A DNA stretch of 24,134 nt from the NCBI GenBank assembly GCA_002269645.1, contig NIVC01001042.1, forward strand, positions 1 to 24,134, in the 5' to 3' direction. The notes under the pieces are model-generated. The model saw only the letters and a program-made list of their open reading frames with translations. It searched no databases and was not told the origin of the DNA. The stretch comes from Macrostomum lignano (lineage: Eukaryota). This document shows, piece after piece, positions 4,426 to 24,134 of the stretch. The position numbers and the translations under genes are program-made. Each line of letters begins with the position of its first letter. Within the stretch, counting starts at the first letter, position 1.

Positions 4426-4450
4426 CAGACCCCAGCCCCAATGCCCTCAG

Positions 4451-4814: not shown

Positions 4815-4984
4815 GTGAGGGCGGGGGCCGACGGGGTCATTTGAGGTCACGGTTAAAGAGCGGGTGAGGGAGCCGGGTCAATTAGGGTCACGTTATAATT
4901 ATTGGTTCGTTTTAGGCATATTTTCAAAATCTCTAGAGCCTTTTCTGTTTTATTGCTGTGGGGTCATATAAGGTTATAAGGTTA

Positions 4985-5345
4985 GGCTGTAGCTTACATC
5001 TGTGGTGTCATCTAGCTTCATGATTAGGTCTATGAGGTCATCTAAGGTCATGCTTACATCTGTGGTGTCATCTAGCTTCATGATTAGGTCTATGAGGTCA
5101 TCTAAAGTCATGCTTACATTTGTGGTGTCATCTAGCTTCATGATTAGGTCTATGAGGTCATCTAAGGTCATGCTTACATCTGTGGTGTCATCTAGCTTCA
5201 TGATAAGGTCTATGAGGTCATATAAGGTCATGATTAAGTTGGTGGGGTCGTCTAAGGTCAGGTCTGTTGGGTCATCTAAGGTAATGCTTAGGTCTGTGGG
5301 GTCATGCAATGTCATGGTTAGATCTGTGGGTTCATCTAAGGTCAT
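4985..5345. repeat. Tandem repeat: about 4 copies of a 60-bp unit (dimer of related 30-mers) grading into degenerate 30-bp monomers
   Basis: Unit TACATCTGTGGTGTCATCTAGCTTCATGATTAGGTCTATGAGGTCATCTAAGGTCATGCT; explains ORFs 4974..5345 and 5002..5409. Confidence 0.93.
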
Positions 5346-5533
5346 TTGTAGTTCAGGTCAATTCAGAGGCTCCAATGAGGCAGTCCATTCTTTGCAGACA
5401 TTCATTTGACACCCCTGAGCTGATTAAACAACATTTTTAATCCCGCAGCTGTCAGGGATTTTCCGAATGAGCCGCTGAGGTCACCGCCTGAGCATCCCGC
5501 ATTTCACTGACCAAGTCTGCATCCGGTGCAGCC

Positions 5534-5707
5534 AGCTGTGCCACTGCAAGTACTGAATATGGCTCGCTTGACTGCAATCTGCATGAATTTGTGTCTGACT
5601 TTGCTGCCTTCACTTCACCCAGCTGTGCTACTGCAAGTACTGAATATGGCTCGCTTGACTGCAGTCTGCATGAATTTGTGTCTGACTTTGCTGCCTTCAA
5701 TTCACCC
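5534..5707. repeat. 87-bp direct tandem duplication (2 copies)
   Basis: AGCTGTGC(C/T)ACTGCAAGTACTGAATATGG... starts at 5534 and again at 5621, with few mismatches. Confidence 0.93.
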
Positions 5708-5860
5708 TGCTGTGGCACCTCATCAATGGCACTTTGTGCTCAAATGCAGTTTAGTTATAAATTTATTAATAATTTTGCATTTGTACTCACGGCTTATTTT
5801 GCTAATCTTTATCCACAGTTTAGGTGTGCATTTTGTAATCCACCTTTGATAATCTTAGGA

Positions 5861-6000
5861 ATTATTTATCTGGTGCAACAGACTGACACAGCAGTTCTGC
5901 ATTAATCATTTTTATTCACCTGCATTGCTCAGATAAAATCATTGCTGTTTCAATTTCTCTGCCATCAATATTGGATGGCACTGCAGTGCAGCAATGTAAA
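5861..6000 (+). repeat. Dispersed repeat copy 1 (homologous to 8933-9076)
   Basis: ATTATTTATC(T/C)GGTGCAACAGACTG..CAGCAGTTCTGCATTAAT...CTGCATTGCTCA.ATAAAA..ATTGCTGTTTCAAT...GCAATGTAAA shared, roughly 75-80% identical by eye. Confidence 0.85.
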
Positions 6001-6010
6001 GTATGTGCAC

Positions 6011-6345
6011 GCAGCCATTGCTCATGTGCCATGACCCATATCTCATGCACGCAGCCATTGCTCATGTGCCATGACCCATATCTCATGCACACAGCCATTG
6101 CCCATGTGCCATGACCCATATCTCATGCACACAGCCATTGCCCATGTGCCATGACCCACATCTCATGCACACAGCCATTGCTCATGTGCCATGACCCACA
6201 TCTCATGCACACAGCCATTGCTCATGTGCCATGACCCATATCTCATGCACACAGCCATTGCTCATGTGCTATGACCCATATCTCATGCACACAGCCATTG
6301 CCCATGTGCCATGACCCACATCTCATGCACACAGCCATTGCTCAT
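6011..6345. repeat. 40-bp tandem repeat, about 8.4 copies
   Basis: (A/G)CAGCCATTGC(T/C)CATGTGCCATGACCCA(T/C)ATCTCATGCAC recurs at 6011, 6051, 6091 ... 6331. Confidence 0.95.
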
Positions 6346-6364
6346 CCATGTCATGAAAGGCTTT

Positions 6365-7998
6365 GATGTAGGATGGGGGGCAGGGAGAGAGACAGGCTGG
6401 GATGTAGGGTGAGGGGCAGGGAGAGAGACAGGCTGGGATGTAGGGTGAGGGGCAGGGAGAGAGACAGGCTGGGGGGCAGGGAGAGAGACAGGCTGGGATG
6501 CAGGGTGAGGGCAGGGAGAGAGACAGGCTGGGATGTAGGGTGAGGGGCAGGGAGAGAGACAGGCTGGGATGCAGGGTGAGGGCAGGGAGAGAGACAGGCT
6601 GGGATGTAGGGTGAGGGGCAGGGAGAGAGACAGGCTGGGATGTAGGGTGAGGGGCAGGGAGAGAGACAGGCTGGGATGTAGGGTGAGGGGCAGGGAGAGG
6701 CAGGCTGGGATGCAGGGTGAGGGCAGGGAGAGAGACAGGCTGGGATGTAGGGTGAGGGCAGGGAGAGAGACAGGCTGGGATGTAGGGTGAGGGGCAGGGA
6801 GAGAGACAGGCTGGGATGTAGGGTGAGGGGCAGGGAGAGAGACAGGCTGGGATGTAGGATGGGGGGCAGGGAGAGAGACAGGCTGGGATGTAGGGTGAGG
6901 GGCAGGGAGAGAGACAGGCTGGGATGTAGGATGGGGGGCAGGGAGAGAGACAGGCTGGGATGTAGGGTGAGGGGCAGGGAGAGAGACAGGCTGGGATGTA
7001 GGGTGAGGGGCAGGGAGAGAGACAGGCTGGGATGTAGGGTGAGGGGCAGGGAGAGAGACAGGCTGGGATGTAGGGTGAGGGGCAGGGAGAGAGACAGGCT
7101 GGGATGTAGGGTGAGGGGCAGGGAGAGAGACAGGCTGGGATGTAGGGTGAGGGGCAGGGAGAGAGACAGGCTGGGATGTAGGATGGGGGGCAGGGAGAGA
7201 GACAGGCTGGGATGTAGGGTGAGGGGCAGGGAGAGAGACAGGCTGGGATGTAGGGTGAGGGCAGGGAGAGAGACAGGCTGGGATGTAGGATGGGGGCAGG
7301 GAGAGAGACAGGCTGGGATGTAGGGTGAGGGGCAGGGAGAGAGACAGGCTGGGATGCAGGGTGAGGGCAGGGAGAGAGACAGGCTGGGATGTAGGGTGAG
7401 GGCAGGGAGAGAGACAGGCTGGGATGCAGGGTGAGGGCAGGGAGAGAGACAGGCTGGGATGTAGGGTGAGGGGCAGGGAGAGAGACAGGCTGGGATGTAG
7501 GGTGAGGGGCAGGGAGAGAGACAGGCTGGGATGTAGGATGGGGGCAGGGAGAGAGACAGGCTGGGATGTAGGGTGAGGGGCAGGGAGAGAGACAGGCTGG
7601 GATGTAGGGTGAGGGCAGGGAGAGAGACAGGCTGGGATGTAGGGTGAGGGGCAGGGAGAGAGACAGGCTGGGATGTAGGATGGGGGCAGGGAGAGAGACA
7701 GGCTGGGATGTAGGATGGGGGCAGGGAGAGAGACAGGCTGGGATTTAGGATGGGGGCAGGGAGAGAGACAGGCTGGGATGTAGGATGGGGGCAGGGAGAG
7801 AGACAGGCTGGGATGTAGGGTGAGGGGCAGGGAGAGAGACAGGCTGGGATGTAGGGTGAGGGCAGGGAGAGAGACAGGCTGGGGGGCAGGGAGAGAGACA
7901 GGCTGGGATGCAGGGTGAGGGGCAGGGCGAGAGACAGGCTGGGATGTAGGATGGGGGGCAGGGAGAGAGACAGGCTGGGATGTAGGATGGGGGGCAGG
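6365..7998. repeat. Purine-rich 35/36-bp minisatellite (GGGGCAGGGAGAGAGACAGGCTGGGATGTAGGGTGA)n, about 45 copies
   Basis: Directly visible; extreme G/A strand bias; source of ORFs 6283..8091, 6569..6790, 6787..7323 and 7745..8041. Confidence 0.97.
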
Positions 7999-8367
7999 GC
8001 TGGCCAATGGGAGGGGCCAAATATCTATACTGATTGGACACCCAAATACCCCCAAAATCGCGAATAAAACAGCTGTCATCAATCCAATCACTTCATCAGT
8101 TCATAACTTTCATCACTTCTTGGCCCTATTGGGTATATAGTCGTCCAGGTCAAAAGTACTTTTAAATCTCCGCAAACAATATCGCTTACAATACGCTACT
8201 CATAGTACTCAAAAGAATATCATTTTCCATTAAAGAGAAGAGCTGCATTGTATTCTCCAGAAATTCGTTTGCACCTGAAGATTCGCTATGCGCCTTGCGC
8301 TCTTGGGGGTGGGCACTCAGTTTTGGAATTTTCCAGTGTCTCTTCGGTGCACTTCACCTTGCAACAC

Positions 8368-8405
8368 TCTCTCCCTCTCTCTCTCTCTCCCTCTCTCTCT
8401 CTCTC
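8368..8405. repeat. Interrupted (CT)n microsatellite
   Basis: ctctccctctctctctctctccctctctctctctctct. Confidence 0.85.
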
Positions 8406-8932
8406 TGCCCAGCTTTTGTTGTTTTGTTGCGCATCTGTAAAAATTCAATTCTATTGCACATTCGAGTCAGCCTTACCATCACTTTCACTGTCCTGCCTTT
8501 GGCTTATAAAAAACTGGCTTCTCAAGCATTCTGTTGCATTGAGTAGCAACTGCTCGCTCAGCTCGGGTTTCGTTTAGCTGCGAGATTGAGCAGTCCTGCT
8601 CACTGGCCTCTCTTAGCCAGCTGCGCGCATGTCAACTGACAGAATTCAGCAATTCACCCTCGCTTTGACCCACTGACCAGATGCTCCACCTTTCTTTTTG
8701 TATTTTTGTCTTCAAAAGTCCAGAAGCAACAGCCAATCAGATTTTGCTTTCGATGCATAGCTTTTTAGCGGCGATGAAAGTGAAAATTGAATACGATTTG
8801 TTATTTCGAATACGTTGGACTAACCTTAGAAAATTAGAAACAGTCCATCACAGGCGCGTGAGGTTGGTGCTGACTCACACAGCCTTTCTTCAGGTAGCTG
8901 ACTGCTCACACAGCCAGTGCAGTTACATGTAC

Positions 8933-9076
8933 ATTATTTATCCGGTGCAACAGACTGGCTCAGCAGTTCTGCATTAATAATCTAGTTTTTCATCTGCATT
9001 GCTCAAATAAAAGTATTGCTGTTTCAATGTTTCTGTCAGATCACTAATGGATGATAATGCAGAGTTGCAATGTAAA
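8933..9076 (+). repeat. Dispersed repeat copy 2 (homologous to 5861-6000)
   Basis: Same orientation as copy 1; the track ORFs end IIYLVQQTDTAVLH and IIYPVQQTGSAVLH. Confidence 0.85.
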
Positions 9077-9365
9077 TCATGGACATGTGTCATGATCATA
9101 TTTAAATCATGTGTCAATTTATGAAATTTGGTAGATAATATTGAAGTGGTAGATGAAACTTAAGTAATAGCAGCATGTGTATAGATAATATATTGTCACT
9201 TAAAAGACTCACATTTTAAAATATTTCTACATTTTCTGTATAATATGCAGTTTAATGTAGTTTATCAGAGCCTAGTCTAGTTTAGTAGGTCCGTTTTGTT
9301 AAACCTCTTTCCTGGGTTAAGATTTGATAATTTAATACCGACTGTTTTTGTTCGTCCTGCTGTAG

Positions 9366-9989
9366 ATGTCAGATGCAATTGGTAATGCGTGCACCTGCAA
9401 CCTCTGCTCCGCTCCAGACTGTCGCACAGCTGGTCATTCAAGGTGACTTTGACCAGGTGCAGCAGCTGGCAACCAGTCAGCTTGTGACGACAACCGACCA
9501 AGCCAACCGTACCGTTCTCATGCTAGCAGCCGACTCGCCAAGAATTCCAGATCAGGCTGAAACGTGCATTTTGTACTTAATTAAACTTGGCGCCGATACC
9601 AAAGCGATTGACCAGTCGGGCAACACGGCTGCGCATTTGGCAGCCCGACAGGACAACGTGCGGCTTCTGGCGCTGATGCCTTTCAATGCTAAGTGGCTGC
9701 AGAACAGCCAAGGCCTGACCCCGCTGATGGAGGCGGCTCAAACCGGAAGCTGGATCTGCGCCAAGCACCTGCTGCATCTGCTGCGGCAGTGGAGTCACAT
9801 TGAGTGGACGGAGACCGACAAGAAGGAAGCTGAGAGTTCGGACTCGCCTAAGCAGAATGGCGGCAAAGGACCCGAGAAGCCGAATAACGAACGAAAACGC
9901 CTGCTTGGCCTGAAGGACCTCAACGGTCTGACAGCTGTAGACATTGCGACGCGCAATGGGCATGAAGAGCTGGCTGGGTACATTGAGAG
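9366..9989 (+). CDS. Ankyrin-repeat protein exon (about 4 ANK repeats), part of a multi-exon gene
   Basis: RTVLMLAADS, GNTAAHLAARQDN, GLTPLMEAAQTG, GLTAVDIATRNGHEELAGYI. Polypyrimidine/AG acceptor at 9365 (or ATG at 9373) and a consensus donor AG|GTGAGT at 9990. Confidence 0.85.
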
Positions 9990-10163
9990 GTGAGTAGCTT
10001 GAGTAGCTGGCTCTTGAAACTGTACTATTAATGGCATATAGATCTGTTGACTTAAATCGAGCTGCATAATGCATGGCAGCCAATAAAAACGTTTTCATCC
10101 TACGGATCCTGCCGAATCATGCAGAAAAGTAGAAGTTTACATTAAAATTGTCTTAAATTGTAG

Positions 10164-10218
10164 GGAGATGCGCTTGGTGGTGACTATCGGTGGTCTAATT
10201 TTGGGCCTGACATCTAAG
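10164..10218 (+). CDS. Possible 55-bp next exon of the ankyrin gene
   Basis: aattgtAG| ... |GTAAGC. Joined to the phase-2 donor at 9990 it reads R-EMRLVVTIGGLILGLTSK in frame and ends in phase 0. Confidence 0.4.
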
Positions 10219-11180
10219 GTAAGCCGAAAAATTATTGAAAAAACGATAAATGTTTTTAAATAAACAACGTGCCACTATTTAACTCGGAAACTTTCGAACT
10301 AGATTAAGAATCCAGCCTTGCAGGCGCGCTTACCAGGAGAACTTGTAGCGATCGTAATGCTTTCGTTAAGTCAACTATATTGCTACTTGTTGAATAGCGG
10401 GCACTGCTTCTGTAAGATAACGGTATTATGCTACACTCGCACATTTATGATCGCAAACATGTTGATTTACAGTCACCCGCAAACGTTCTGCTTTAAATAC
10501 TCTGACAGTAGTGTGTGATGTTAGTTTCCTACTGATAACGCGGTGGTCTTGACATTTGAGGAGAGTTCAGAAAAGTCAAAGCAACGTCGCAAAACAACTG
10601 GATATAAATCGTTTATTATTTATTGTAAGTCGACTTTTCAGTACCAATGAGTGCGTGGGATACTTACGGCGACTCTTAGGGCTCTTGGTAAGAGATTAAA
10701 AATCTTAATCAAGAAGGTACAAAAAATCTAAAGCTACAAGATTAGGACAAAAGGGAAAAGAAAACAAGAGAACAAGGATCTTCATTGATCGCATTCATTT
10801 AAACAGGTTGTATAATATCTAGCTAACTCTTAAGTGCATTAAAACAAATACACAGAGTTTAATAAAATTATAGTTAATAGCTCGTAGAAGTGTGTATACA
10901 CAATAAGTCTATAAAATAATAAAACATTTTAACTTCCTAATTTTTTAAGTAGATAAATTGTAGAGCTCTGTGAATTGTGACGAATTCCGTCAGCGCACTA
11001 CTTTTGGGTTTCTTTTGTTCACTTTTATTACATCATCTTCGAAATCGTCAACGAAATCTATGATGTCTAAAATGTGGTGGAAAATTGTCGACCTTCTTGA
11101 TTTACCTACTTGCAGTAGTAGGTTTAGGTTTAATCATCATCATCATAAAACAAGTGATTGTTAGCAGCATTGAAATCTTC

Positions 11181-12508
11181 TCAAATCAAATGTTGATACC
11201 TTGAAAGAATTCTCTGCTCCACTTCATCAGCGTCGTCACGTTGAGAGATTTCCTTGAGCCAGTTGACAGCTTGGTAGTCGCCTGGTGTCAGTTCCAGTCG
11301 CAGGCACTGCAACAGGGCCTCAAAGTTCATATAGTAAAAGTTCTCAAAGTTTTCCATCGGCAACGGGAAGCATTCAGAAATGAAGTCGTAAAAATCACTT
11401 TTCACTCGAAACTGAAATTTATGTCGCTGTCCAAATTTGAAGCAAAACTTCCACGCCGAATCCTGGGTTTCTAAATGCCTCCACACGATGCTTTCAGTTG
11501 CCTCAGCAGCTGGCCTGTCACTGGGCCATGCAAGACAACGGCAAACCTGGTGAGCTCGGCAGTCCGTCAGAAACTCCACGGCGGTGCTCAGGTCGTCAAA
11601 CATAAGGCAGCTCAAAGCTTTGAGACTCTGCCGGGCTGATCGAGCGCAATCTGGCAACTTGTCTAACTGCTCAAACAGAGTAGCATGAGCCTCGCCACCT
11701 TCATAGTTAACTTCAAAGAGACTAAGTAAAGATTCCCTTACTAAATTATACACTTTATGATACGCAGGCTCGTTCGACTTTTGATCCGGGTTCCACAAAA
11801 GAATAGGTAGTATGAGGAACGGATGAAAGTAAAACATGCCTTCAGCACTGACTGGTTTCAGATATTCATTGAAGCTCATCAGCAGCTGGGGCAAGTGGTC
11901 GATCACGTCTCGAAGAACTTGCACGATCTCTTCAAAACTGCTGCGATCGGCACCCTTCAGATACAAAGCCGCATCGCTCAAGAAGAAATGCTCCATTATT
12001 CGGCCATCTGTATTGTCAGCGGAACGACTCGTCTCGACACTGTCCAACAGCATCTGCACCGATCGACGGATGAGTGTCATAAGGTTCTCCGGCTTCCACT
12101 GCTCTTCTGGTGTCTCTTCAAGCATTCGGAACGTGACCGTCTTCGCGTGATACGCCTTCAGACCATGAACTCTGCGACCGATCACCTTCTTGACCAGAAA
12201 CTTGAGCGTGACGAACAGCTGGCCCTGCAGAGTTGTGAGACTCCGTAGCAGGCGTCTCTCTAGGAAGGTGGTGCTCACTCGGAGCTGCTTGCCGGCTTGT
12301 CCAGGAGGTGCCGCGTGAACCACGTGACAGGGCGAGGCTTCGAGCTCGCTTGTGAGAGACTGCAGCACCGTTTGTGGGATGCTGGATTTGGCCAGTCGAT
12401 GAGGCTGCAGCGGCCCGATTGGAGGATAGCAGCAGAGGCGACAGGCGCTCACGCGGTCCACGGCGGGTCGGAGAGTCGAACCGTTCTCTGGCCGGGCTGG
12501 GTTTGACG
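11181..12508 (-). CDS. Gene A exon 3: remainder of Mab-21 domain plus C-terminal domain
   Basis: ctttAG|CGTCAAAC; uninterrupted frame including track ORF 11181..12461; TGA stop at 11183-11181. Confidence 0.9.
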
Positions 12509-15348
12509 CTAAAGTTGGGAAGCAGAATTACGAGTATAATATAAAGTCCTTTCTAGATGACCAAAATACTAAATTTAAGCTCATAATCATTGAACCCTCA
12601 CCAAATCCTTCACATTCTATATGCCCGTTGTAGTAACTTGTTGTTTGTCGACTGTTAGCATTCGGCATTGGCAGAAGCGTCTCACGTGATACAATCGGCC
12701 AGGCATTAGCTGAACTACGTCAATGTCGGATTCAAAATCAGTTCTACCGTCCATACGTGTTAGACTGTTGCCCCAGCCCTCGGAGTAGCTTCCCACTACG
12801 AAGACCTCATTGTCATTCAGTCGGTTTCTTAGAATTGTTTCCAGTACGTCGGCCATTGCACTCTGCATTGCGGCTCTGGTTTCGGAAAATCCCGACTTGG
12901 TTAGTGCTGCGTGTAGCTGCAGACTGAGTTCTGTGTCTTCGGGTTGTGGTCTGAAGTTTAGTGAAGTTAGACATTTCTCCTTAGTATTCTTCTCGTACAT
13001 GTGATAAAAATTACAGCTAAAATACCTGTTTCATAAAATGGAACAAAACTTACCCATACTTAGTAAGGTTTTCAAACTGTTCAAAACGTTTACTAGATAA
13101 GTTCGCTTCTGGCTGAAGAACAGGTGGAATATCAGTACTGTCTTTTATTACTTCAGAGTCTGCAGCGCAATAATCGAAATTTTCTTGAGCCCTTCTGAGT
13201 CGTCTAGCTACAGGCAGATGGTTTTGAGCGAGGGACAACTCCAAAGGCGTATTTCCATCAAGTGCGTGTGGCTGATCGTGCATCTGGCTTCAAGCAGCAG
13301 CTCAACTACTCGATCATGACCTGACTTTGCGGCAATGTGCAGCGGCGACTTGCCACTCTTGGTTCGAATATCCGAATCTGCTTTAGAGCTCAGAAGCAAG
13401 TTGGTAATGTCAGTGTGACCCTGTTGGCTAGATATCAAAAGAGGCGAATATCCCTCTCCGACTTCTTGAAGATCTACTTCGGCTTGGCCTGTCAGGAGGG
13501 AAGACACAACTCCTACGTGACCCCAGTGCACTGCCAAGTGGAGCGGCGACTCTCCAGTATCCCTCTGGACGTCGACATTGGCCTGGGCTCCGATAAGCAA
13601 GTCAACAGTTTCCTGGTGGTTCTCTTGCGCTGCAATGTGCAAAGGTGCTAGAGAAAATTTCCAGAGGACATTCACATCTGCTTGCGACTTTATCAGAGCT
13701 TTGACGACTTCGCTATGGCCAAACTGTGCGGCCATGTATAAAGGCGAGAAGCCTCTTTCGTCTTGCAGTTCAACATCGGCTTGTGCCTTCAATAACTCAT
13801 TGACAACTTTTTCGTGTCCTTTTTGGCAGGCAATGTATAAAGGTGACTGACCGGTAAGCACTCGTGTATTAATGTTTGCTTGTGCTTTTATGAGTGTCTT
13901 AACAGATTCTTGGAGACCATCCTGCGAGGCAATGTAGAGTGGTGTTGCCTGCTCCACAGCTCCGAGATTTAGGTCAGATTGAGCCGTAATAAGCAAATTA
14001 AGCACGTTGATATGATTTTCTTGCGTTGCCATGTAAGCGGCAGTAGCTCCTGACCGAGATCGAAAATTTACATCGGCGTTAGCTGAAACCAATGCTTGCA
14101 ATAACTTGCAATCACCATGCTTAGAGACTAAATGGATTGGAGCGAACCCCTGATCGTCCAGAATATCTAGATTTGAGCGTGCTGTAATTAGGAGGCTGCT
14201 CAATTCGCAAGAGGCTCTGTTTAGCGCAGCATGAAGAGCAGTTTCTCCTGATAATCCTGGAGTATTCGGATCTGCTTGCGAATTGATAAGAAGCTCAATA
14301 ATGTGACGGCTTTCAGCTTGAGTGGCAAGAATGAGAGGTGTCATTGACTGTTCAGTCCGACAATCCAAGTTTGCCATTGCCTTAATTAATATCTGTACCA
14401 CCTGTCTATGACCATTCACGTTGCTGCATGCAAAGGTGATTTTTGGTCACAAGTTTGTGCGTCCGGATCAGCTTGCGCGTTGAGCAGAAAGGTCAAAAGT
14501 TTTTGATTGCCCTTTTCTGCCGAAATGAAAAGCGCGGACCTACCATTTCGAGTCTGTAAATTGACGTCAGCTTGCGCTAGTACAAGTGCTTTGGCTATGT
14601 GATACTGACCAGCTTTTGCCGCAATGAAGAGCGCTGTTGTCTCGTCTTTAGAGAGAAGATCGACATCAGCTTGAGCTGCAATCAGCATCTGAAGCACTTT
14701 CAAATAACCCTCTTGTGACGCCATGAAAATCGGTGACCAGCCCTCGTCGTCAGGCAAATTCACATCTGCATGTGCGTCCAGCAGCTGTCTGACAATTCCA
14801 CGGTGATTGAACTGTACAGCAGCAAGCAGGGGTGTCTCACCAGACTCTGTTTGCAGGTTCACATCGACACCGGCCTTGATTAATTTCCTAACGAATTCGA
14901 CTGAGCCATCCTGGCAGGCGATGTACAGCGGCGAACAACCGTTGCTTTGTCTGAGATTCAAGTCGGCTTGAGACCGAGCCAGATGGTACACAACATCGGG
15001 CCAATTGTCTTGAGCGGCAATGTGCATCGGGCTCGCCCCTTGAAACTGCTGGATATCCAAATCGGCCTGAGCCCTGATTAGCAGATCCACCACTTTGAGG
15101 TGGCCATTCTGCACCGCAAAGAATAACGGCGATTCGTTCTGCTTGTCAACAAGTTGACATCCGCCTGCGCTTTGATGAGCCTGTCAACGACTGCGTAGCG
15201 ACCGAGATAGCAGGCTAGTGCAGTGGAGTTGTACGGCCTGAGCAATATCTGATCTCCTCATTTAGCTCTATTAGCTTCTGAAAGGTGCTTATCAATATCT
15301 GCAAATTCTCCGTCTTGATTGCGTCCAGAAATTCTTTTTTGCTTGCAT
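11181..15348 (-). CDS. Gene A: ankyrin-repeat (about 21) + Mab-21/cGAS-like nucleotidyltransferase (cGLR-type) + C-terminal helical domain; 3 coding exons, about 1325 aa after repair of about 6 frameshifts
   Basis: Exons 15348-13054, 12950-12602 and 12508-11181 with GT..AG introns (103 bp, phase 2; 93 bp, phase 1). Phases close correctly after adding back 6 nt. Motifs: VVGSYSEGWG (12793-12776), SDIDVV (12727-12719), VDRVSA, CHVVH, LRVSTTFLERRLL, LKFL, LKAYHAKTVTF, QWKPENL, MEHFF. Confidence 0.88.
11869..12501 (-). repeat. Left arm of a 633-bp inverted repeat (partner 17751-18383)
   Basis: Manual comparison with the reverse complement of the right arm gave 9 substitutions and no indels (about 98.6% identity). 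Confidence 0.95.
12602..12950 (-). CDS. Gene A exon 2: Mab-21/cGAS-like spine helix and catalytic GS...DxD
   Basis: ttcAG|ACCACAACCC; EDTELSLQLHAALTKSGFSETRAAMQSAMADVLETILRNRLNDNEVFVVGSYSEGWGNSLTRMDGRTDFESDIDVVQL; ends YNGHIECEGF-G|GTGAGG after a 1-nt repair. Confidence 0.87.
13054..15348 (-). CDS. Gene A exon 1: ankyrin array (N-cap + about 21 repeats) and linker
   Basis: Joins an untracked segment MQAKKEFLDAIKTENL...TTPLHLACYLG...SPLFFAVQNG with track ORFs 14416..15114, 13208..14419 and 13050..13283. Repeated TPLH/SPLY-xAxxxG motifs occur every about 33 aa; donor GG|GTAAGT at 13053. Confidence 0.88.
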
Positions 15349-15767
15349 GTCAGCGTTTTTTGCAAATTATTAGCAAAGTAAGACCCTCTTTGAGAATTGC
15401 GATGGCTAAAGAGCTGTAGACAGTAAGCGAGCCATGATAGTCTATTTGTACTGCATCGCTGCAAGTAATGCACTGGATTAGTTGAATTTGAAAAAAGCGC
15501 TCGGGTAAATGCACATATATGCCAGTAGTTTCTTTCTCCCTGCAATTTCTGTCTTTTTGGCGTACACTTCTGTACGCAGAAACGTGCACGACCTAGGATA
15601 GAGAGAAAAATGTACGGTGGGAGTACCTTGTTCGCGGCATTACAATTAATAAGCACTAATGGTGCAATTATTTCAGGCGTAGCTCTGAGGCCCACTTTTT
15701 TCGATAGGCTCTTGGCACAGATCAAGTGCAGAAATTAAAGAGTAAATTTTAAGAATAGGTAAGCAAC
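15349..15767. promoter_or_regulatory. Probable bidirectional promoter/5' UTR region between head-to-head genes A and B
   Basis: 419 bp between the inferred ATG of A (15348) and the ATG of B (15768); AT-rich and non-coding. No specific element is claimed. Confidence 0.55.
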
Positions 15768-17234
15768 ATGGAGATAGAGTATCTCCAGGCCCTACTATCA
15801 GGAAATCTAGTAGTTGTCGATGCCTTTATAGCTGCTGGAGTTCCCGTGGACAAAATGTTCTACATCGGCGACAACTCTGGAGCTGCCCTTCATTTGGCCT
15901 CGTCAACTGGTCAAGTTGCAGTGGTCGACCGGCTGCTGAGAGCTCAAGCCGATGTCAATAGACGTCAAGAAGCCGGCGCCACGCCGCTGTTCCTGGCCGC
16001 CGAGTTTGGGCACGCGGACGTCGCCAAGCTGCTGCTTCAAAACGGTGCAAATGCCGACCTGCCGCGCTGGGACTCAGGCGACGCGCCGCTGCATATCGCA
16101 TGCGACAAGGGCCACACGGCGGTAGTAGATCGACTCATTGCCGCTGGAGCCGACCTCAATCCTGTACAGGAGGCAGGCTGCACCCCCATCTACATGGCAG
16201 CGCAAAATGGCCACTCCAAGATTGTCGCTCGGCTGCTCAGAGCTGGAGTCGACCTTGACTGGCGTTGTCTAACCAACGGGAATTCTGCTCTGCTCGCAGC
16301 CACTCAGGAAGGTCACGCTCGCGTTGTTGCTAGCCTTATTCAAGCGGCAGCCAACGTGAATCTTACTAACAAAAAAGGTGAAACAGCGTTGCACTTTGCT
16401 GCTCAAAATGGACAACTCAAGATTACTCAGCTACTTCTCAAGAGCCGCGCCGATGCCAACGTCAAAGCAAGCAACGGCTGCGAACCGATTCACACCGCGG
16501 CTCAGAACGGAAATCTGGCAATAGTGCAAGCCCTGATCGCAGCCCAGGCGGACGTCAACACTGTCGAGGTGGACGGTGCGTCTCCAGTTTACATCGCCTC
16601 ACAGAATGGCCATCAAAGAGTTATCAAAACTCTGATTGAATCGCAGGCTAACATTGATCATCAGCGCAATGACGGCGTGTCAACGATTTACATTGCCGCT
16701 CAAGAGGGTCACAGCGAAGTGGCCAGGCTGCTAGTGCGCTCTGGAGCAGCAAAAGTGGATGCACAAACTAGGACAGGAGAGACTCCACTGCACATTACTG
16801 CTCAGAGAGGCGACCAAGCGACTCTATACGAGCTTCTTCAAGCAGCTCAAGGTAGTCCAGTGAATTCGAAGCAGAACGACGGCTGCTCGCCGATTTTTCT
16901 GGCAGCGCAGTTCGGTCATTGGAAAGCCATTGAGCGTCTTATTCACGCTGGTGCCGATGTCAACACGACAAGAGCGACTACAGGGCAGACACCTCTGCAC
17001 GCCGCAGCTGAGAATGGACATCCAGAAGCGACTAAATCGCTGCTCCGATGCTTTGCTGATGTCACTGCAACAGACAGGGATGGTCAACCCTTTAGACTTG
17101 GCTAAAAATGTAACCACAAAACAGTTGCTGAACTTCTTGGAAGGCCCTATATGGCAGGATAATTCAGAAGATGCTGGGACTGTGCAAGACGAGCCGATAA
17201 CGTCACAAGTTGATAAAAGCAGTTCCAGCTTGAG
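15768..17234 (+). CDS. Gene B exon 1: ankyrin array (N-cap + about 13 repeats) and linker
   Basis: Track ORF 15768..17105 continues in the frame of 16930..17238 (DGQTPLDLAK after a 2-nt repair at about 17087); donor AG|GTAATA at 17235. Confidence 0.9.
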
Positions 17235-19179
17235 GTAATATAACTTCATAAAGCCGCACAGTAAATATCCTTTACTCTGAAAATTCACATTAAGTTTCAC
17301 TTTCAATTTCTCGTACGTATTTCAGCGAAGAAGAATTCAGTCAGCAACTGCACAGTTCTCCAGCAGGCTGGCTTTGAGCAGACCCGAGCTGCCCTTCAGA
17401 GCTCGTGTGCGACGTCCTGCAGCGCATACTAAGACAACGCCTACGCAGCGAAGAAGTTTTTGTTGTTGGCAGCTACTCGGAAGGCTGGGGAAACAGCCTC
17501 AGCCATTTGGATGGCAGAACGGACCCAGAATCCGACATAGACGTGATGCAGCTCATACCAGGAAGGATTTATCACCTGAAAGATGTCTGCAGGTGCACTG
17601 ATCCTGACTCTGAACTAGTTGTGGAATTGACAACGGTCATATAATCTGTGAAGGATATGGTAAGCATATTTTTATTTCTCTAATCTCGAAACTCTAAAGC
17701 TCGAAGTTATAATAGTCTTCAGTAATTTACCAATCTCAATCAGCTTCCAGCCCAGCCCGGCCAGAGAACGGTTCGACTCTCCGACCCGCCGTGGACCGCG
17801 TGAGCGCCTGTCGCCTCTGCTGCTATCCTCCAATCGGGCCGCTGCAGCCTCATCGACTGGCCAAATCCAGCATCCCACAACCGGTGCTGCAGTCTCTCAC
17901 AAGCGAGCTCGAAGCCTCGCCCTGTCACGTGGTTCACGCGGCACCTCCTGGACAAGCCGGCAAGCAGCTCCGAGTGAGCACCACCTTCTTAGAGAGACGC
18001 CTGCTACGGAGTCTCACGACTCTGCAGGGCCAGCTGTTCGTCACGCTCAAGTTTCTGGTCAAGAAGGTGATCGGTCGCAGAGTTCACGGTCTGAAGGCGT
18101 ATCACGCGAAGACGGTCACGTTCCGAATGCTTGAAGAGACACCAGAAGAGCAGTGGAAGCCGGAGAACCTTGTGACACTCATCCGTCGATCGGTGCAGAT
18201 GCTGTTGGACAGTGTCGAGACGAGTCGTTCCGCTGACAATACAGATGGTCGAATCATGGAGCATTTCTTCTTGAGCGATGCAGCTTTGTATCTGAAGGGT
18301 GCCGATCGCAGCAGTTTTGAAGAGATCGTGCAAGTTCTTCGAGACGTGATCGACCACTTGCCCCAGCTTCTGATGAGCTTCAAAAACAGCCTGTACCAAA
18401 TTGGGTCAAACAATTTGTTTCATTTTCACCCATTTCTTATTCTCCCAGAGATCGATCCAAAGTTTTCAACAGGGCTGCACTTCCGCGATTATTACAGCAT
18501 CTATGACATCGTAAGAGATTCGTTTGAATCTCTGGTCGTGCCTGACTTTAGCCGTGAATTCGAAGCCTCCCTGGTGAAGAAGATTGGCAGGTTGCCAGAC
18601 TGTGCTAGATCAGCTCGCGAGAGCCTCAGGGCCCTGGTCTGCCTGAAATTTAACGATACAGTTGCCGCCTCTGATGTTTTGTTGGACTGCAACGGTCACA
18701 TAGTAAGCAGAGGCATTAAGGAATTCGCTTCTAGACCCGCAGAAGGGTCAGGGGAGTCGGCAGTATTCAACCAGCTATGCAACAGCGACCTAGCCTGGAG
18801 ATTCAGCTTCATGTTCCTAAGCCGGCCGGATCTGTCCAGCCTCCTACCGGATCATCTGGCCACCTGGTTTCCCCTGCGAATGGAGAACTACGACGCGTTC
18901 TACTATATAAACTTTGATTGCCTGCTGCTTTGTCTGAGTTGCGAGCTGCGAGTCAAAAGCGCCGAGGCTCGGAACGCTTGGCTTCTGGGTCTGCTTCTGC
19001 GCGACGAAGCAGACATTCAGGAACTGCTCACTGCCATGCGATACTGCTCAGATCACAGTCTGGCTCTATCGGTGATTAGAAAATTTCAAACAAGCATTCA
19101 AAGCCACGAGCTAACGTCTAAAGAACTGATAAGATTTCAACAGGAGCGTCTTCTAGCTGATTTACCACAGGCCTTCTAG
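15768..19179 (+). CDS. Gene B: ankyrin-repeat (about 13) + Mab-21/cGAS-like nucleotidyltransferase (cGLR-type) + C-terminal helical domain; 3 coding exons, about 1080 aa after repair of 4 frameshift sites
   Basis: Exons 15768-17234, 17326-17659 and 17744-19179; GT..AG introns of 91 bp (phase 2) and 84 bp (phase 1) at the same positions as in gene A. Motifs: VVGSYSEGWG (17468-17485), SDIDVM (17534-17542), VDRVSA (D at 17794), LKAYHAKT. Confidence 0.88.
17326..17659 (+). CDS. Gene B exon 2: Mab-21/cGAS-like spine helix and catalytic GS...DxD
   Basis: tttcAG|CGAAGAAG; reconstructed EEEFSQQLHTVLQQAGFEQTRAALQSSCADVLQRILRQRLRSEEVFVVGSYSEGWGNSLSHLDGRTDPESDIDVMQL...DNGHIICEGY-G|GTAAGC. Confidence 0.85.
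17744..19179 (+). CDS. Gene B exon 3: remainder of Mab-21 domain plus C-terminal domain
   Basis: caatcAG|CTTCCAGC; uninterrupted frame including track ORF 17791..19179; TAG stop at 19177-19179. Confidence 0.9.
17751..18383 (+). repeat. Right arm of the 633-bp inverted repeat (partner 11869-12501)
   Basis: CCCAGCCCGGCCAGAGAACGG ... CTGATGAGCTTCAA; the arms enclose about 5.25 kb. Confidence 0.95.
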
Positions 19180-19286
19180 AAGTTTGATAATTTGCTTTTT
19201 TACTTTCTACAACATCTTGCGCAACGCTTTGTACTTCGGTTAGTAGTTCGTAACAAACATAATGCCCGAAGTTAAATTTGTGTCCC

Positions 19287-19606
19287 ATAATAATACAATA
19301 ATAATAATTGATTACACTTGTCCTCGTGGCCAGATGTGCAACCGACAGCTCAGCCGCAGCTATTTCGCGCGCATCTGAAGGCTGCGTACGGCTGTTCAGT
19401 TCAAGGACTGGGGGGTGGCCACACACACCCTCAATTACCCCAACTTTTGCTGGCACCCATTTTACAGCTGGGGAACTGAAGCAATGCAGAGTTAAGTGTC
19501 TTGCTCAAATGGAACACCAATTGCTACGACTGGGTCAAAATTCGAACCCCGACCTTTCATTCGTGAGTCCGATGCTCCAACCACTAGGCTACAAACCCGC
19601 CTCCTC
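19287..19606 (-). mobile_element. tRNA-derived SINE with a CORE (MIR-like) domain and (ATT)n-like tail
   Basis: Minus strand: A-box-like TAGCCTAGTGG (19591-19581), B-box GGTTCGAATT (19548-19539), CORE-like TTGAGCAAGACACTTAACTCTGCATTGCTTCAGTTCCCAGCTGTAAAATGGG (19508-19456; compare recalled MIR core TTGGGCAAGTCACTTAACCTCTCTGTGCCTCAGTTTCCTCATCTGTAAAATGGG), tail ATTATTATTATTGTATTATTAT. Confidence 0.8.
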
Positions 19607-20534
19607 GTGCCGCATGAATATTTTTAGATTGAAATACCATCTACTACATCATGCTTCTCTATAATACAAAAAAAATTATTTCAACTGAATCAAACAGTCG
19701 GGGACCCTAGACCACTCCAACTGGAACAAGGAGGGCTTTCTAAGAAATGGCAGTCGTAACAGTGCTGCTCCTGCTGCCGCTTCTCCAGATAGAAAAAGTC
19801 CAACAAGAAAGAAGCAGCTCTTGCCTTTATCTAGTTTTCTTTTTTTATTTTAGTTGATTCTGTCTCTCAGACTCCCTGCAGTGGCGTTGCAGAGCAGTGG
19901 AGGGACAGGCGGAGGCTTCTTGAGAGAAACTAAATCGGACTTCCATCAGAGAGAGCCTCGTCCTCAATTTTCTTGTCCTTCAGGACCAGTTTTAATCAAT
20001 CAAGCAGAACAGCTGCCCCCGCTGCACCCTCACCCACTGCTGCAGCATAAGTGAGGAGCGTTGAGAGCTGAGCCGAGAATGCGGTATGAGCACACGCGAT
20101 GGTCAGTGCAGTCAAGCCCTAGCCTCAACTCCAGCAGCCAGATGCAAGTGCAGCTGCCGCATCATAATCCATCATCATTTTGTTAATGCGACAACAGCAA
20201 CCCCAGCTAATCCCCCAGCCGAACACCAAAGCCCCAGTAAAGGAAGAAAGTGCGCTATTTGGCTTCATTTTGGTTCAAACAAATCAGCGCCAGTGTGCAG
20301 TGTTAGTTTGGCTGAGCTGCGAGTGGAGCTCTGTATCTGGGGATGGGGATCAGTATGATGCTGCTGAGGTCTTAGCTATCCTGTACTCTGTGTTTTTTAT
20401 TCTTATAGGACACATTATCAATGATACTTGCTTTCTTGATGTGAGTTTCCTGTCTCAAAGAAAGTTATATAATTCTTCTGTTTCATGGTATAATATTTGT
20501 CTGAAATTTTTCTTCATTTCTTTTGGCACTTCTT

Positions 20535-20675
20535 GTCCGCTCTCCTCATCATTCTTCTCCTTATCCTCCATCTCCTCCTCCTTCTCCTTCCCCTCCTTCT
20601 CCCCTCTTTCTCCTGCTCCTCCTCCTTCTCCTCCTCCTCCTCCCCGTTCTCCTTCTTGTACTTCTCCCCTTGTCC
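20535..20675. repeat. Pyrimidine-rich low-complexity (CCT/CTT)-type tract
   Basis: ctcctcatcattcttctccttatcctcc...cctcctcctccc; source of ORFs 20497..20724, 20514..20714 and 20523..20705. Confidence 0.85.
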
Positions 20676-21227
20676 TTGTCTTCTCAAAGTCTCATCTCTT
20701 TTTGAAACTATCAAGTATTTTTAAAGGCAACACTCTGGTAATCCGTTTTGAATGACATTCCATAATGATTTTTCCCATGCAATAGCAATTTAAAAAAACC
20801 TCAATAAAGGCATTTAAAAACTTTGGCCCTACAAGACTGAAAATTTCTCCAAAGCCTCACTCAGGTTACAACGGTGCCACAGAGAAGAGCAGTCCACAAC
20901 AGCAGCGCTCAAAATACACACACTAAAGACCCGAGAAGTGTGACTGCTGCAAACTCTGACTGAGCAGCAAATGGGGCAAAGCTGTTGCAGGGCTGCGCTT
21001 TTCACGCGCTCAGGTGCCGCTGCAGCCACACAGCTGCTGGGTGGGGCGACGAAGCAGCAGGGCTTACGCAGTGGGCTCGTCTTCTGAGAGAGCGACTTCT
21101 CGCTTGAAGGAGTAACTGATAGAGAAAGTAAAACGTGCCTTATTGAACACGTGTCAGAACTCCTGTTACACAGATTGTGTCGGAGTAGAATTCTAGGTGT
21201 GGCTGTAGGTGGATAAGTATTCAGAAC

Positions 21228-22640
<1,413 letters not shown>

Positions 22641-23587
22641 TAGTACACGTATCTACATATAGTCAAAGCTACTTAATGCATACATAGGTGGAAGCCACAC
22701 TGAAAAGTGCAGCTACTTTGGATTCCGCAAGCCTCTTTGCAGCTGCTGTGTGATTGGACAGGAACCGCGAGTCCTGGACTGGAGGAAACTGGATTGGAAG
22801 GCGCGGCCATGGCATAGAAGCGGAGCAGACAGACGGGATAAAAATGATCCTATCGCGGACGCCACGCCTCCCATTTCCAACTGCCTGAGCTGGCGTCACA
22901 GATCCACTCCCAGCCGAGATCCCCAATGCCGAGAATGCGATTCCGGAGCTGCCCAGTCTGACCTCACCTTGAAAGCGGCACAGAGCGCAGCTCCGGCGGA
23001 GCCAAGCAAAGAAGAGGGCGAAGACAGAAACCCGGCATTGCGGATCTGTCTTTCTTTGCATTTGCTTTTTCTGCCGCAGCCTCACGACCCTGCCGCCGGT
23101 GACAATTTCCGTGGCGGCTCGGCTGCTTTCTACCTGATCCCTTCTCCGCCCTCCCTACTAGAAAGTGCAGCGCAGCAAGGAGAGACCGACTGAAGGGAGT
23201 AGAAGAGAGCTCAATACGTGTCTCCAAGGCTGAGACTTTAGAAAGTCTTCAAGGATTCTTCTCTCGATAAGCCTCTGTCAAGAAGCTGTCGAGTGTAGCA
23301 TCGTGTAAGTGGCTCTCGTCCAATTTGTTTGGCAAAGTGCGCAGCAAATGAATATGCTTGGCAAGCCTGCCCACATTTCACTCTTTTTTTGAGATTTTAG
23401 CATACAGACTTTTCTTAGATATAAACAGCTGCAACTCGTAGGTAGGGAATACAGGATTAAGTATAAGTCGTAGACTATTGTTAAGCGTAGACATGCAGAA
23501 GTCATTGATGCTCGAAATATATCATCTGTAGGTCCTGTTCACCATAGGTAAATAGAGACATTCCCTGATCATAATAGACGTATTTTG

Positions 23588-24134
23588 TGGTTATTATTAG
23601 GCGTCCTTAGTTATTACATACAACCTTCACACTAAGCGTCCTTAGATATTGCATACATCCTTGATCATTAAGCGTCCTTAGTTATTACATACTTGTACAT
23701 CCTTGATTATTAGGCGTCCTTAGTTATTAAATACAATCTTGATCATTAGGCGTCCTTAATATTACATACATCCTTGATTAGTAGGCAATCATTGATATTA
23801 CATACATCCTCGATCATTAAGCATCAATAGTTAGTACACAACATCCTTGACATTAAGTATCACTAGTTAGTACACACATCTCTAATCATTAAGTATCATT
23901 AGTTAGTACACATATCCTAATCATAAGTATCATTAGTTAGTACACAACATCCTTGATCATTAAGCATTATTAGCTAGTGTAAACATCCTTGATCATTACA
24001 CATTCTTGGTTATTACATACATCCTTGATCATAAGAATCCTTGGTTATTGCATACATCCTTGATCATTAAGCATTATTTGTTAGTGTACACATCCTTGAT
24101 GCATAAGAATCCTTGGTTATTACATACATCCTTG
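23588..24134. repeat. Degenerate AT-rich tandem repeat, about 36-38 bp unit, about 15 copies, running off the right edge
   Basis: Consensus approximately ATCCTTGATCATTAAGCGTCCTTAGTTATTACATAC, with variant blocks. Confidence 0.88.

What the first reader, a model, noticed from the sequence alone, without database searches (positions are those of the whole stretch)
11869..18383. 633-bp near-identical inverted block inside otherwise diverged paralogs: gene conversion and a possible invertible cassette
Seen: 11869-12501 and 17751-18383 differ at only 9 positions (7 synonymous, 2 nonsynonymous: T/P and M/V), whereas introns are unalignable and exon 2, the ANK arrays and the C-terminal domains are heavily diverged. 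The block starts 7 nt inside exon 3 and ends abruptly mid-exon. Inference: recent gene conversion or segmental exchange is homogenising the enzyme core. Because the arms are inverted and in the same reading frame, a crossover between them would flip the 5.25-kb interval (both promoters, both ANK arrays, both exon 2s). That would give two new in-frame chimeras (ANK21 with C-terminus B, ANK13 with C-terminus A), a shufflon-like route to receptor diversity.
Basis: partly seen in the sequence, partly recalled or inferred. Interest (0 to 1): 0.8.

Follow-up and report, generated by a model that had tools for sequence, protein, structure and literature searches.

The report
Gene-conversion patch between inverted flatworm paralogs
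Two neighbouring, oppositely oriented flatworm genes for ankyrin-repeat/cGAS-like (Mab-21) proteins share one 633-640 bp stretch that is almost identical while the rest of the genes is anciently diverged, which is the ordinary signature of gene conversion between paralogs; the proposed flipping of the DNA between them is geometrically possible but has no evidence here.

Summary
Arms 11869-12510 and 17742-18383 form a 642-nt inverted repeat. The 633-nt core has 9 differences (7 synonymous, 2 nonsynonymous) and no indels. Block dS is about 0.06, while synonymous sites just downstream are saturated (pS 0.77). The introns are unalignable and exon 2 is 67% identical. The window is Macrostomum lignano. 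The arms lie in exon 3 of two head-to-head ANK-repeat + Mab-21/cGAS-like genes: A (minus strand, about 21 ANK) and B (plus strand, about 13 ANK). Outside the block, A and B are no more alike than either is to other family members, so they are old paralogs with one homogenised island. The island starts 7 nt inside exon 3, next to a non-homologous intron. It covers the third catalytic Asp and the Mab-21_C helical lobe, the family's better-conserved stretch. Best explanation: non-allelic gene conversion, in one event or several. Changes since then show purifying selection. The inversion idea is sound in geometry, with a yeast precedent for conversion-maintained inverted repeats that drive inversion. 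No recombinase, no specific sites and no second orientation could be found or tested, so "shufflon-like" is not supported. This is a new example of a known phenomenon, of modest interest.

The parts
11869..12510 (-). Inverted-repeat arm in gene A (near-identical core 11869-12501); 5' part of exon 3
   Evidence: 642-nt arm, 98% complementary to 17742-18383; 9 differences in the 633-nt core
17742..18383 (+). Inverted-repeat arm in gene B (near-identical core 17751-18383); 5' part of exon 3
11181..12508 (-). Gene A exon 3: rest of the Mab-21-like domain (third Asp motif AVDRV, Mab-21_C lobe), then a C-terminal extension of about 230 aa; stop at 11181-11183
   Evidence: Pfam PF20266 on aa 96-183 of the ORF
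12509..12601 (-). Gene A intron 2 (GT..AG, 93 nt), not alignable with B intron 2
   Evidence: z=1.2
12602..12950 (-). Gene A exon 2: N-terminal nucleotidyltransferase part (GSYSEGWG ... ESDIDV); one frame break near 12636
   Evidence: 67% nt identity to B exon 2
12951..13053 (-). Gene A intron 1 (103 nt, phase 2 as in B)
13054..15348 (-). Gene A exon 1: ATG at 15348 and about 21 ankyrin repeats; five frame breaks (about 15337, 15218, 15149, 14418, 13260)
15349..15767 (.). 419-bp region between the two divergent start codons; presumed shared (bidirectional) promoter region, by inference only
   Evidence: coordinates of the two ATGs; no promoter test was done
15768..17234 (+). Gene B exon 1: ATG at 15768, about 13 ankyrin repeats and a linker; frame break at about 17088
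   Evidence: 100% identical over the ANK array to UniProt models P0015/P0010
17235..17325 (+). Gene B intron 1 (91 nt)
17326..17659 (+). Gene B exon 2: nucleotidyltransferase N-terminal part (GSYSEGWG ... ESDIDV); frame breaks near 17358, 17409 and 17627
17660..17743 (+). Gene B intron 2 (84 nt)
17744..19179 (+). Gene B exon 3: rest of the Mab-21-like domain, then a C-terminal extension of about 265 aa; stop at 19177-19179

Best explanation
The block is a non-allelic (interlocus) gene-conversion tract between two adjacent, divergently transcribed and anciently diverged paralogs of the Macrostomum lignano ANK-repeat + Mab-21/cGAS-like family. During repair or recombination, one copy's exon-3 5' part was used as template for the other. 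This overwrote about 633-640 bp covering the third catalytic Asp region and the Mab-21_C helical lobe. The tract is confined to an island of pre-existing homology. On the 5' side it stops 7 nt from an intron with no homology between the genes. On the 3' side it stops where family-wide conservation drops. Either one event, dated roughly to the time the M. lignano subgenomes diverged, or repeated events with self-reinforcing boundaries would give this picture. Since homogenisation both copies have evolved under purifying selection. Shown: the tract, its boundaries, the gene structures, the old paralogy outside the tract and the selection signature. Inferred: the mechanism (conversion), the reason for the boundaries, the timing, and that the genes are functional.
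For: A unique 642-nt inverted repeat with sharp edges. Block dS is 0.059 against saturated synonymous sites immediately downstream (pS 0.77), so the similarity is not due to protein-level constraint. The 633-nt stretch compares with a permutation maximum of 115 nt. Outside the block, A-B protein identity (0.24-0.68 per 25-residue window) equals A-other and B-other identity. Inside it is 0.96-1.0, against about 0.6 to other members, which is phylogenetic incongruence. Block DNA is only 66-73% identical to paralogs at two other loci, so about 70% is the family background. Introns are unalignable (z about 1), which explains the 5' stop. The block coincides with the family's better-conserved stretch (about 0.6 vs about 0.4 downstream). 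All differences are substitutions, 6 transitions to 3 transversions, and 7 of 9 are synonymous (P=0.0013 vs neutral), so this is real post-conversion evolution under constraint. Gene models from other M. lignano copies (UniProt P0015, P0010, P0011) join the B-type ANK array and exon 2 to the same block. Block GC is 57-58% against 46-49% in the rest of exon 3. That contrast is larger than in paralogs (-1 to +3 points) and weakly fits GC-biased conversion. Conversion between adjacent inverted paralogs is well documented (PMC3966223; PMC9731477).
Against: If the pre-conversion identity was only about 70%, as in other paralog pairs, homologous strand invasion would be inefficient. This favours either continuous homogenisation since the original duplication or a template-switch mechanism, and I cannot tell them apart. 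There is no gradient of divergence beyond the 3' edge, where third codon positions are saturated right next to the boundary. Repeated events with variable endpoints might have produced such a gradient. No independent assembly evidence exists for the A-type copy of the block: no database model carries A-type sequence. Donor and acceptor cannot be assigned.
Confidence: 0.85

Rival explanations
1. Flip/flop locus: the homogenised arms act as substrates for non-allelic homologous recombination with crossover. The 5.2-kb interval (both promoters, ANK arrays and exon 2s) then exists in two orientations among subgenomes, individuals or cells, giving four ANK/C-terminus combinations from two genes. 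The first reader's 'shufflon-like' idea is the programmed version of this.
For: The geometry is right. The arms are inverted and homologous codon for codon, so any crossover yields in-frame chimeras. There is a close precedent in yeast, where continual homogenisation of inverted paralogs maintains a recurrently re-inverting 24-kb region (PMC9731477). The B-type model P0011, from another copy, carries the A-type residues (T and M) at both informative block positions. That is what a chimera or a second conversion would give, but simple point mutation explains it equally well.
Against: No recombinase and no short specific sites exist in or near the interval. The only integrase is in a degraded retroelement 10 kb away. 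The arms are short (0.64 kb vs 4 kb in yeast) and interrupted, with a longest perfect run of 130 nt. No gene model has a B-type N-terminus with an A-type tail or the reverse, and the available models all stop inside the block. The yeast region itself is stable on laboratory timescales (section heading, PMC9731477). Nothing here shows a second orientation.
Confidence: 0.1
2. The patch was copied by a replicative template switch (microhomology-mediated, between nearby inverted paralogs) or from a spliced cDNA, rather than by classical heteroduplex gene conversion.
For: Family background identity of about 70% is low for homologous strand invasion. The 5' boundary lies within 7 nt of the exon 3 start. 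A cDNA donor would produce that, because its upstream sequence (exon 2) is not contiguous in the genomic target. The head-to-head arrangement 5.2 kb apart suits fork template switching.
Against: The same boundary is predicted simply by the lack of homology in the intron. Intron 2 is retained in both genes and exon 2 is not homogenised. No junction scars, insertions or microhomology signatures were identified. The outcome cannot be distinguished from gene conversion with the data at hand.
Confidence: 0.08
3. Assembly or polishing artefact: the near-identity was created by collapse, chimeric joining or cross-polishing in a repeat-rich, polyploid genome.
For: M. lignano assemblies are difficult. 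36% of Mlig_3_7 length is in scaffolds chimeric between subgenomes (PMC10733133). The window shows ten probable 1-2-nt indels in exons 1-2, so sequence quality is imperfect. No independent A-type model exists.
Against: Cross-polishing needs reads to cross-map, so the sequences would already have to be near-identical. It cannot turn about 70% identity into 98.6% over exactly 633 nt with in-register, in-frame edges. The 9 differences are substitutions with a transition bias and a 7:2 synonymous excess, as expected of real evolution, and the block has no indels. Foldback (palindromic) read artefacts would make the whole flanks identical, yet these are 53-67% identical. Other public gene models join B-type sequence to this block. 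Chimerism between subgenomes that differ by about 2% cannot create A/B identity.
Confidence: 0.04
4. The block is conserved at the nucleotide level by selection, for example an embedded RNA element, regulatory element or overlapping ORF, rather than by exchange.
For: Antisense ORFs of 104-141 aa overlap both arms. The block is the family's most conserved protein segment.
Against: Other family members are only 66-73% identical to the block at DNA level, so there is no family-wide nucleotide constraint. The antisense ORFs simply follow from the two arms being the same sequence and have no independent support. Seven of the nine differences are at synonymous positions, as expected if only the sense protein is constrained.
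Confidence: 0.02

Closest known systems
Interlocus gene conversion between adjacent inverted paralogs (e.g. C. elegans hsp16 modules and hsp70-7/hsp70-8; reviewed in PMC3966223)
   Same: Neighbouring paralogs in opposite orientation, a few kb or less apart, carry a segment of near-identity restricted to part of the ORF. The tract length of hundreds of bp is in the usual range.
   Different: Here the paralogs are otherwise as diverged as any two family members (about 40-50% protein identity). The tract is therefore an isolated island in old genes rather than part of a young duplicate. The 5' edge abuts an intron, whereas some C. elegans tracts extend into introns.
Saccharomyces chromosome XIV flip/flop region (Salzberg et al. 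2022, PMC9731477)
   Same: Inverted paralogous genes are kept near-identical by recurrent homogenisation and flank a segment that can invert by homologous recombination.
   Different: The yeast repeats are 4 kb and include whole genes, and inversion leaves those genes unchanged. Both orientations are documented in many strains. Here the repeats are 0.64 kb and lie inside the coding sequences, so an inversion would swap gene halves. No second orientation has been observed.
Bacterial shufflons / site-specific invertible segments (Rci- or Hin-type)
   Same: Inversion of a segment between inverted repeats inside coding sequence would swap protein ends in frame.
   Different: Shufflons use a dedicated site-specific recombinase and short specific sites, usually several of them, and switch at high frequency. 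This is a metazoan locus with a single pair of 642-bp homologous coding arms and no recombinase.
cGAS-like receptors (cGLRs) / Mab-21 family, including ANK-fused cGLRs (Li et al. 2023, PMC9980059)
   Same: Mab-21_C domain hit, a GS...DxD...D motif pattern, and a predicted fold closest to MAB21L1, Sp-cGLR1, MB21D2 and cGAS. An ANK-repeat fusion architecture is reported for a minority of cGLRs.
   Different: The relationship is very distant: E about 2e-4 to cGAS over 60 residues, no hit to the Pfam Mab-21 N-terminal domain, and a poorly modelled NTase core. The family has an extra conserved C-terminal extension of about 230-265 aa with no match. [quoted passage not shown]

Membership tests
Interlocus gene-conversion tract | Segment with far higher identity than the flanking homologous sequence, with sharp boundaries | tested here: met
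   98.6% identity over 633 nt against 53-67% in the flanks; permutation maximum 115 nt
Interlocus gene-conversion tract | Elevated identity at synonymous sites, which rules out protein-level selection as the cause | tested here: met
   dS 0.059 in the block against pS 0.77 downstream
Interlocus gene-conversion tract | Phylogenetic incongruence: the paralogs are nearest relatives inside the tract only | tested here: met
   Outside the block, A-B identity equals A/B-to-other-member identity. Inside it is 0.96-1.0, against about 0.6 to others. Block DNA is 66-73% identical to paralogs in L001 and L002.
Interlocus gene-conversion tract | Identified donor and acceptor, or independent homogenisation in separate lineages | not testable with these tools
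   Needs DNA of the homeologous copies and of sister species. Look-ups of other copies failed.
Shufflon / site-specific DNA inversion system | Dedicated site-specific recombinase encoded at or near the locus | tested here: not met
   Pfam scans of all ORFs >=80 aa across 9000-21000, which includes the interval, found only ANK and Mab-21_C. The only integrase belongs to a degraded retroelement at 1050-1472.
Shufflon / site-specific DNA inversion system | Short specific recombination sites, usually multiple, bounding the invertible segments | tested here: not met
   There is one pair of 642-nt homologous coding arms and no other inverted repeat >=30 nt in the window
Shufflon / site-specific DNA inversion system | Both orientations present in a population of molecules | not testable with these tools
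   No reads or alternative assemblies of this locus were accessible
NAHR flip/flop inversion between homogenised inverted paralogs | High-identity inverted repeats, maintained by conversion, flanking the segment | tested here: met
   The arms are short, however (0.64 kb, longest perfect run 130 nt).
NAHR flip/flop inversion between homogenised inverted paralogs | Both orientations documented among strains, haplotypes or species | not testable with these tools
   Public gene models end inside the block, and neither C-terminal tail is in the protein database
cGLR / Mab-21 nucleotidyltransferase family | Mab-21 fold (NTase core plus C-terminal helical lobe) | tested here: inconclusive
   PF20266 Mab-21_C scores at its threshold (24.0-24.8 vs 24.1 bits). 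A family profile hits cGAS at E about 2e-4 over 60 residues. The AlphaFold model of P0001 (mean pLDDT 60, core <50) has only Mab21-fold proteins as top Foldseek hits, with weak E-values and TM scores.
cGLR / Mab-21 nucleotidyltransferase family | Catalytic GS motif and acidic triad ([DE]x[DE] plus a third D) | tested here: inconclusive
   GSYSEGWG and ESDIDV in exon 2 and AVDRV at the start of exon 3 are visible in both genes. They were assigned by eye, not by structural superposition.
cGLR / Mab-21 nucleotidyltransferase family | Ligand-activated synthesis of a nucleotide second messenger | not testable with these tools
   Requires biochemistry

The most novel reading that the evidence does not exclude
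The locus is a natural module-swapping flip/flop. Conversion keeps a 0.64-kb in-frame recombination 'hinge' between the sensor-like ANK array plus NTase N-lobe and the variable C-terminal domain of two head-to-head cGAS-like genes. Both orientations would segregate among M. lignano subgenomes or populations, so two genes could encode four receptor combinations.
Probability: 0.08. Interest if true: 0.65.

Novelty: new member of a known kind. Interest (0 to 1): 0.3.

Why it matters
As it stands, this is a clean textbook-quality example of a bounded conversion tract in old, inverted paralogs. It is useful as a caution for phylogenies, read mapping and expression quantification of the expanded M. 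lignano ANK-Mab-21 family. It is also a marker whose divergence can be compared with the subgenome split. It would matter more if the inversion were found. An in-frame recombination hinge swapping sensor and C-terminal modules of innate-immune-like genes in an animal would be an unusual way to generate receptor combinations. Separately, a family of 20 or so ANK-fused, very divergent cGAS-like genes in a flatworm is of interest, because most platyhelminths are reported to lack cGLRs beyond Mab21-like proteins (PMC9980059).

Tried and rejected
1. I tried to fetch DNA of other copies of the locus, to compare orientation and the A/B block phylogeny. Exact-protein look-ups for P0015, P0011, the intact B ANK ORF (15768-17105) and the neighbouring ORF 9373-9993 all returned nothing. 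Only two paralogous loci from GCA_002269645.1 were reachable (L001, L002).
2. I looked for chimeric gene models (B-type N-terminus with A-type tail, or the reverse) in the protein database. None exist, and no model at all carries either tail at more than 55% identity. The test was therefore uninformative rather than negative.
3. I looked for the same head-to-head plus inverted-repeat layout in paralogous loci. L001 has a single gene and no inverted repeat. L002 has a tandem direct pair at about 48% identity. The layout is not a general family feature in the two loci seen.
4. I considered small introns as the cause of the frame changes in exon 2 and rejected this. P0015 reads straight through these positions.
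5. I considered long-standing pseudogenes and judged this unlikely. The five longest coding segments (232-462 aa) have no premature stops, there is a significant synonymous excess since conversion, and near-identical models read through the breaks. Very recent inactivation cannot be excluded.
6. The structure prediction of the family (P0001 with 11 sequences) gave a poor NTase core, so catalytic-site geometry could not be checked.
7. The pattern of T/P and M/V among public B-type models (P0010 = P,M; P0011 = T,M; window B = P,V; window A = T,M) was considered as evidence for repeated conversion. Two point mutations explain it equally well, so it was set aside.
Full report
**Observation**

The window contains exactly one inverted repeat of 30 nt or more: 11869-12510 against 17742-18383, 642 nt, 98% complementary, with 5231 nt between the arms. 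In register, the core 11869-12501 / 17751-18383 differs at 9 positions and has no indels. Identity collapses within a few bases on both sides.

Placed in the reading frame, 7 of the 9 differences are synonymous and 2 are not: T/P at 12371/17881 and M/V at 12080/18172. Six are transitions and three transversions. Three more differences lie in the first 7 nt of exon 3.

A permutation of the exon-3 mismatches never gives a stretch with <=9 mismatches longer than 115 nt, against 633 nt observed.

**What the genes are**

The arms lie in exon 3 of two head-to-head genes.
- Gene A (minus strand): ATG at 15348; exon 1 to 13054 with about 21 ankyrin repeats; exon 2 at 12950-12602; exon 3 at 12508-11181.
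- Gene B (plus strand): ATG at 15768; exon 1 to 17234 with about 13 repeats; exon 2 at 17326-17659; exon 3 at 17744-19179.

Intron positions and phases are shared. The start codons are 419 bp apart.

Domain content by exon:
- Exon 2 encodes a GS...DxD nucleotidyltransferase motif (GSYSEGWG...ESDIDV).
- Exon 3 begins with a likely third acidic residue (AVDRV). It continues through the only Pfam-detectable domain, Mab-21_C, which scores at its threshold.
- Exon 3 then runs into an extension of 230-265 residues that is conserved in the family but matches nothing known.

A family profile reaches cGAS only at E about 2e-4 over 60 residues. An AlphaFold model of family member P0001 has a poorly modelled core, and its top fold matches are all Mab-21-fold proteins: MAB21L1, coral Sp-cGLR1, MB21D2, cGAS and MiD49/51. 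These are therefore very divergent cGAS-like/Mab-21 proteins fused to ANK arrays. That architecture is reported for a minority of cGLRs, although most platyhelminths are said to lack cGLRs beyond Mab21-like proteins (PMC9980059).

**How the block compares with the rest**

| Region | A vs B |
|---|---|
| Block, codon level | dS 0.059, dN 0.006 |
| Rest of exon 3 | pS 0.77 (saturated), pN 0.42 |
| Exon 2 | 67% nt identity |
| 300 nt after the block | 65% nt identity |
| Introns 1 and 2 | not alignable beyond chance, z about 1 |

In a family alignment, A-B identity outside the block is the same as A-other and B-other identity. Inside the block it is 0.96-1.0, against about 0.6 to other members. 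Block DNA is only 66-73% identical to paralogs at two other loci from the NCBI assembly.

A and B are therefore old paralogs, not a young inverted duplication, and only this island has been homogenised. The island coincides with the family's better-conserved stretch, about 0.6 mean identity among other members against about 0.4 downstream.

**Mechanism**

Four features together are the standard signature of non-allelic gene conversion:
- elevated synonymous identity;
- sharp edges;
- nearest-relative status only inside the tract;
- a tract length of a few hundred bp.

Conversion is well documented for adjacent inverted paralogs (PMC3966223). The 5' edge is explained by the intron, because there is no homology into which a heteroduplex could extend. 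The 3' edge falls where conservation drops.

One caveat applies. If the pre-event identity was only about 70%, strand invasion would be inefficient. This favours either continuous homogenisation since the original duplication, with self-reinforcing boundaries, or a replicative template switch. These cannot be separated here. The absence of a divergence gradient beyond the 3' edge is compatible with a single event or with a hard homology boundary.

The block's 1.4% divergence is of the same order as the 1.4-2.4% divergence between the three M. lignano subgenomes (PMC10733133). The last homogenisation is therefore not very recent.

Since then, 7 of 9 changes have been synonymous (P=0.0013 against neutrality), so the genes have been under purifying selection.

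Block GC (57-58%) exceeds the rest of exon 3 (46-49%) by more than in the paralogs. This weakly fits GC-biased conversion.

**Are the genes intact?**

As assembled, A needs six frame corrections and B four. All are in exons 1-2 and none in either exon 3. Most of those traced look like the loss of one or two bases next to an identical base. One example is an A-run immediately after A's ATG.

Three points argue for assembly or copy-specific indels rather than old pseudogenes:
- UniProt models P0015 and P0010 are 100% identical to B across the ANK array, yet read straight through the linker and exon 2.
- P0015 has its own frame slip inside the block, so the assembly behind it also carries indels.
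- The five longest coding segments (232-462 aa) have no premature stops, and the selection signal is clear.

Only read pile-ups can settle this.

**The inversion idea**

The geometry is correct. A crossover between the arms would invert 12511-17741 and produce ANK21-tail B and ANK13-tail A chimeras, both in frame. The closest precedent is the yeast chromosome XIV flip/flop region, where recurrently homogenised 4-kb inverted paralogs drive repeated re-inversion (PMC9731477).

Several things count against an active system here:
- The arms are 0.64 kb, and the longest perfect run between them is 130 nt.
- There is no recombinase and no short specific sites. The only integrase belongs to a degraded retroelement 10 kb away.
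- Nothing shows a second orientation.

Public B-type models all stop inside the block, and no database protein carries either tail. The DNA of other copies could not be reached. P0011, a B-type model from another copy, has the A-type residues at both informative sites, but two point mutations explain that equally well. I therefore rate a polymorphic NAHR inversion at about 0.1. A programmed, shufflon-like system is not supported.

**Artefact check**

- Foldback or collapse artefacts would make the flanks identical, and they are not.
- Cross-polishing cannot turn about 70% identity into 98.6% in a 633-nt in-frame segment.
- The differences look like real substitutions under constraint.
- Other public models join B-type sequence to the block.
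- Chimerism between subgenomes that differ by about 2% cannot create A/B identity.

The residual probability of an artefact is about 0.04, mainly because no independent A-type sequence exists.

**Verdict**

The gene-conversion interpretation is supported, and the invertible-cassette interpretation is untested and unlikely as a programmed system. This is a new example of a known phenomenon, in a little-studied, divergent ANK-Mab-21 family of a polyploid flatworm. Interest is modest (0.3). It would rise if long reads or homeologous copies revealed both orientations.

Noticed in passing
window, about 15337, 15218, 15149, 14418, 13260, 12636 (gene A); about 17088, 17358, 17409, 17627 (gene B): There are ten reading-frame breaks, all in exons 1-2 and none in either exon 3. 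Most of those traced look like a 1-2-nt loss next to an identical base, for example the A-run after A's ATG. UniProt models that are 100% identical in the ANK array (P0015, P0010) read through them. They are probably assembly or copy-specific indels, but their absence from 2.8 kb of exon 3 is unexplained.
   Followed up: partly
window 17089-17160 (gene B linker after the last ANK repeat): Back-translating P0015 by eye against this linker suggests roughly 5 substitutions and 3 single-base indels in about 75 nt. The preceding ANK array, about 410 aligned residues, is 100% identical at protein level. This is a local patch of high divergence or low sequence quality of unknown cause.
   Followed up: partly
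window 11184-11868 and 18384-19176; family proteins P0001-P0009, P0021, P0022: All family members carry a conserved extension of about 230-265 aa after Mab-21_C, with invariant motifs such as FHPF and W-K-F. It has no Pfam or PDB sequence match, although it is partly well modelled as helical. It is an uncharacterised domain appended to a cGAS-like fold.
   Followed up: partly
(protein family); PMC9980059: M. lignano has about 20 clusters of this divergent Mab-21/cGAS-like family, many of them ANK-fused. [quoted passage not shown] The family may have been missed by, or fall outside, their cGLR definition.
   Followed up: partly
window 519-3272, minus strand: A degraded LTR-type retroelement. 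One ORF has a SCAN-like capsid domain and a retroviral aspartyl protease (1692-3272). Integrase zinc-binding and core fragments lie in separate frames (1050-1472, 519-1013). No reverse-transcriptase ORF was seen.
   Followed up: partly
window 3764-3986, 4274-4420, 4992-5345, 5532-5718, 6006-6345, 6370-7999: A dense run of different minisatellites, with units of 16, 21/74, 30/60, 87, 40 and 12/36 nt. It includes a 1.6-kb G-rich array (GC skew about 0.72) that creates a spurious 602-aa ORF. The run from 5966 onward is bracketed by direct repeats of about 100 nt (5861-5964 and 8933-9038, 85-92% identical), which suggests a repeat-carrying element or a duplication.
   Followed up: no
window 21228-22643: A (GATA)n microsatellite of about 355 units at 97% purity, 1.4 kb long.
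   Followed up: no
window 23593-24134: A 36/71/107-nt satellite array that runs off the end of the window.
   Followed up: no
window 9373-9993, plus strand: An intact ATG-initiated ORF of 206 aa with ankyrin repeats lies 1.2 kb beyond the 3' end of gene A. It has no Mab-21 part and is not on record as a called gene in the searchable assemblies.
   Followed up: partly
L002 7370-9283 and 9750-11831 (NIVC01000111.1): Two family members sit in tandem, in the same orientation, at about 48% identity, next to a DM9-domain gene and clathrin heavy chain. The family therefore occurs in local clusters with different orientations.
   Followed up: partly
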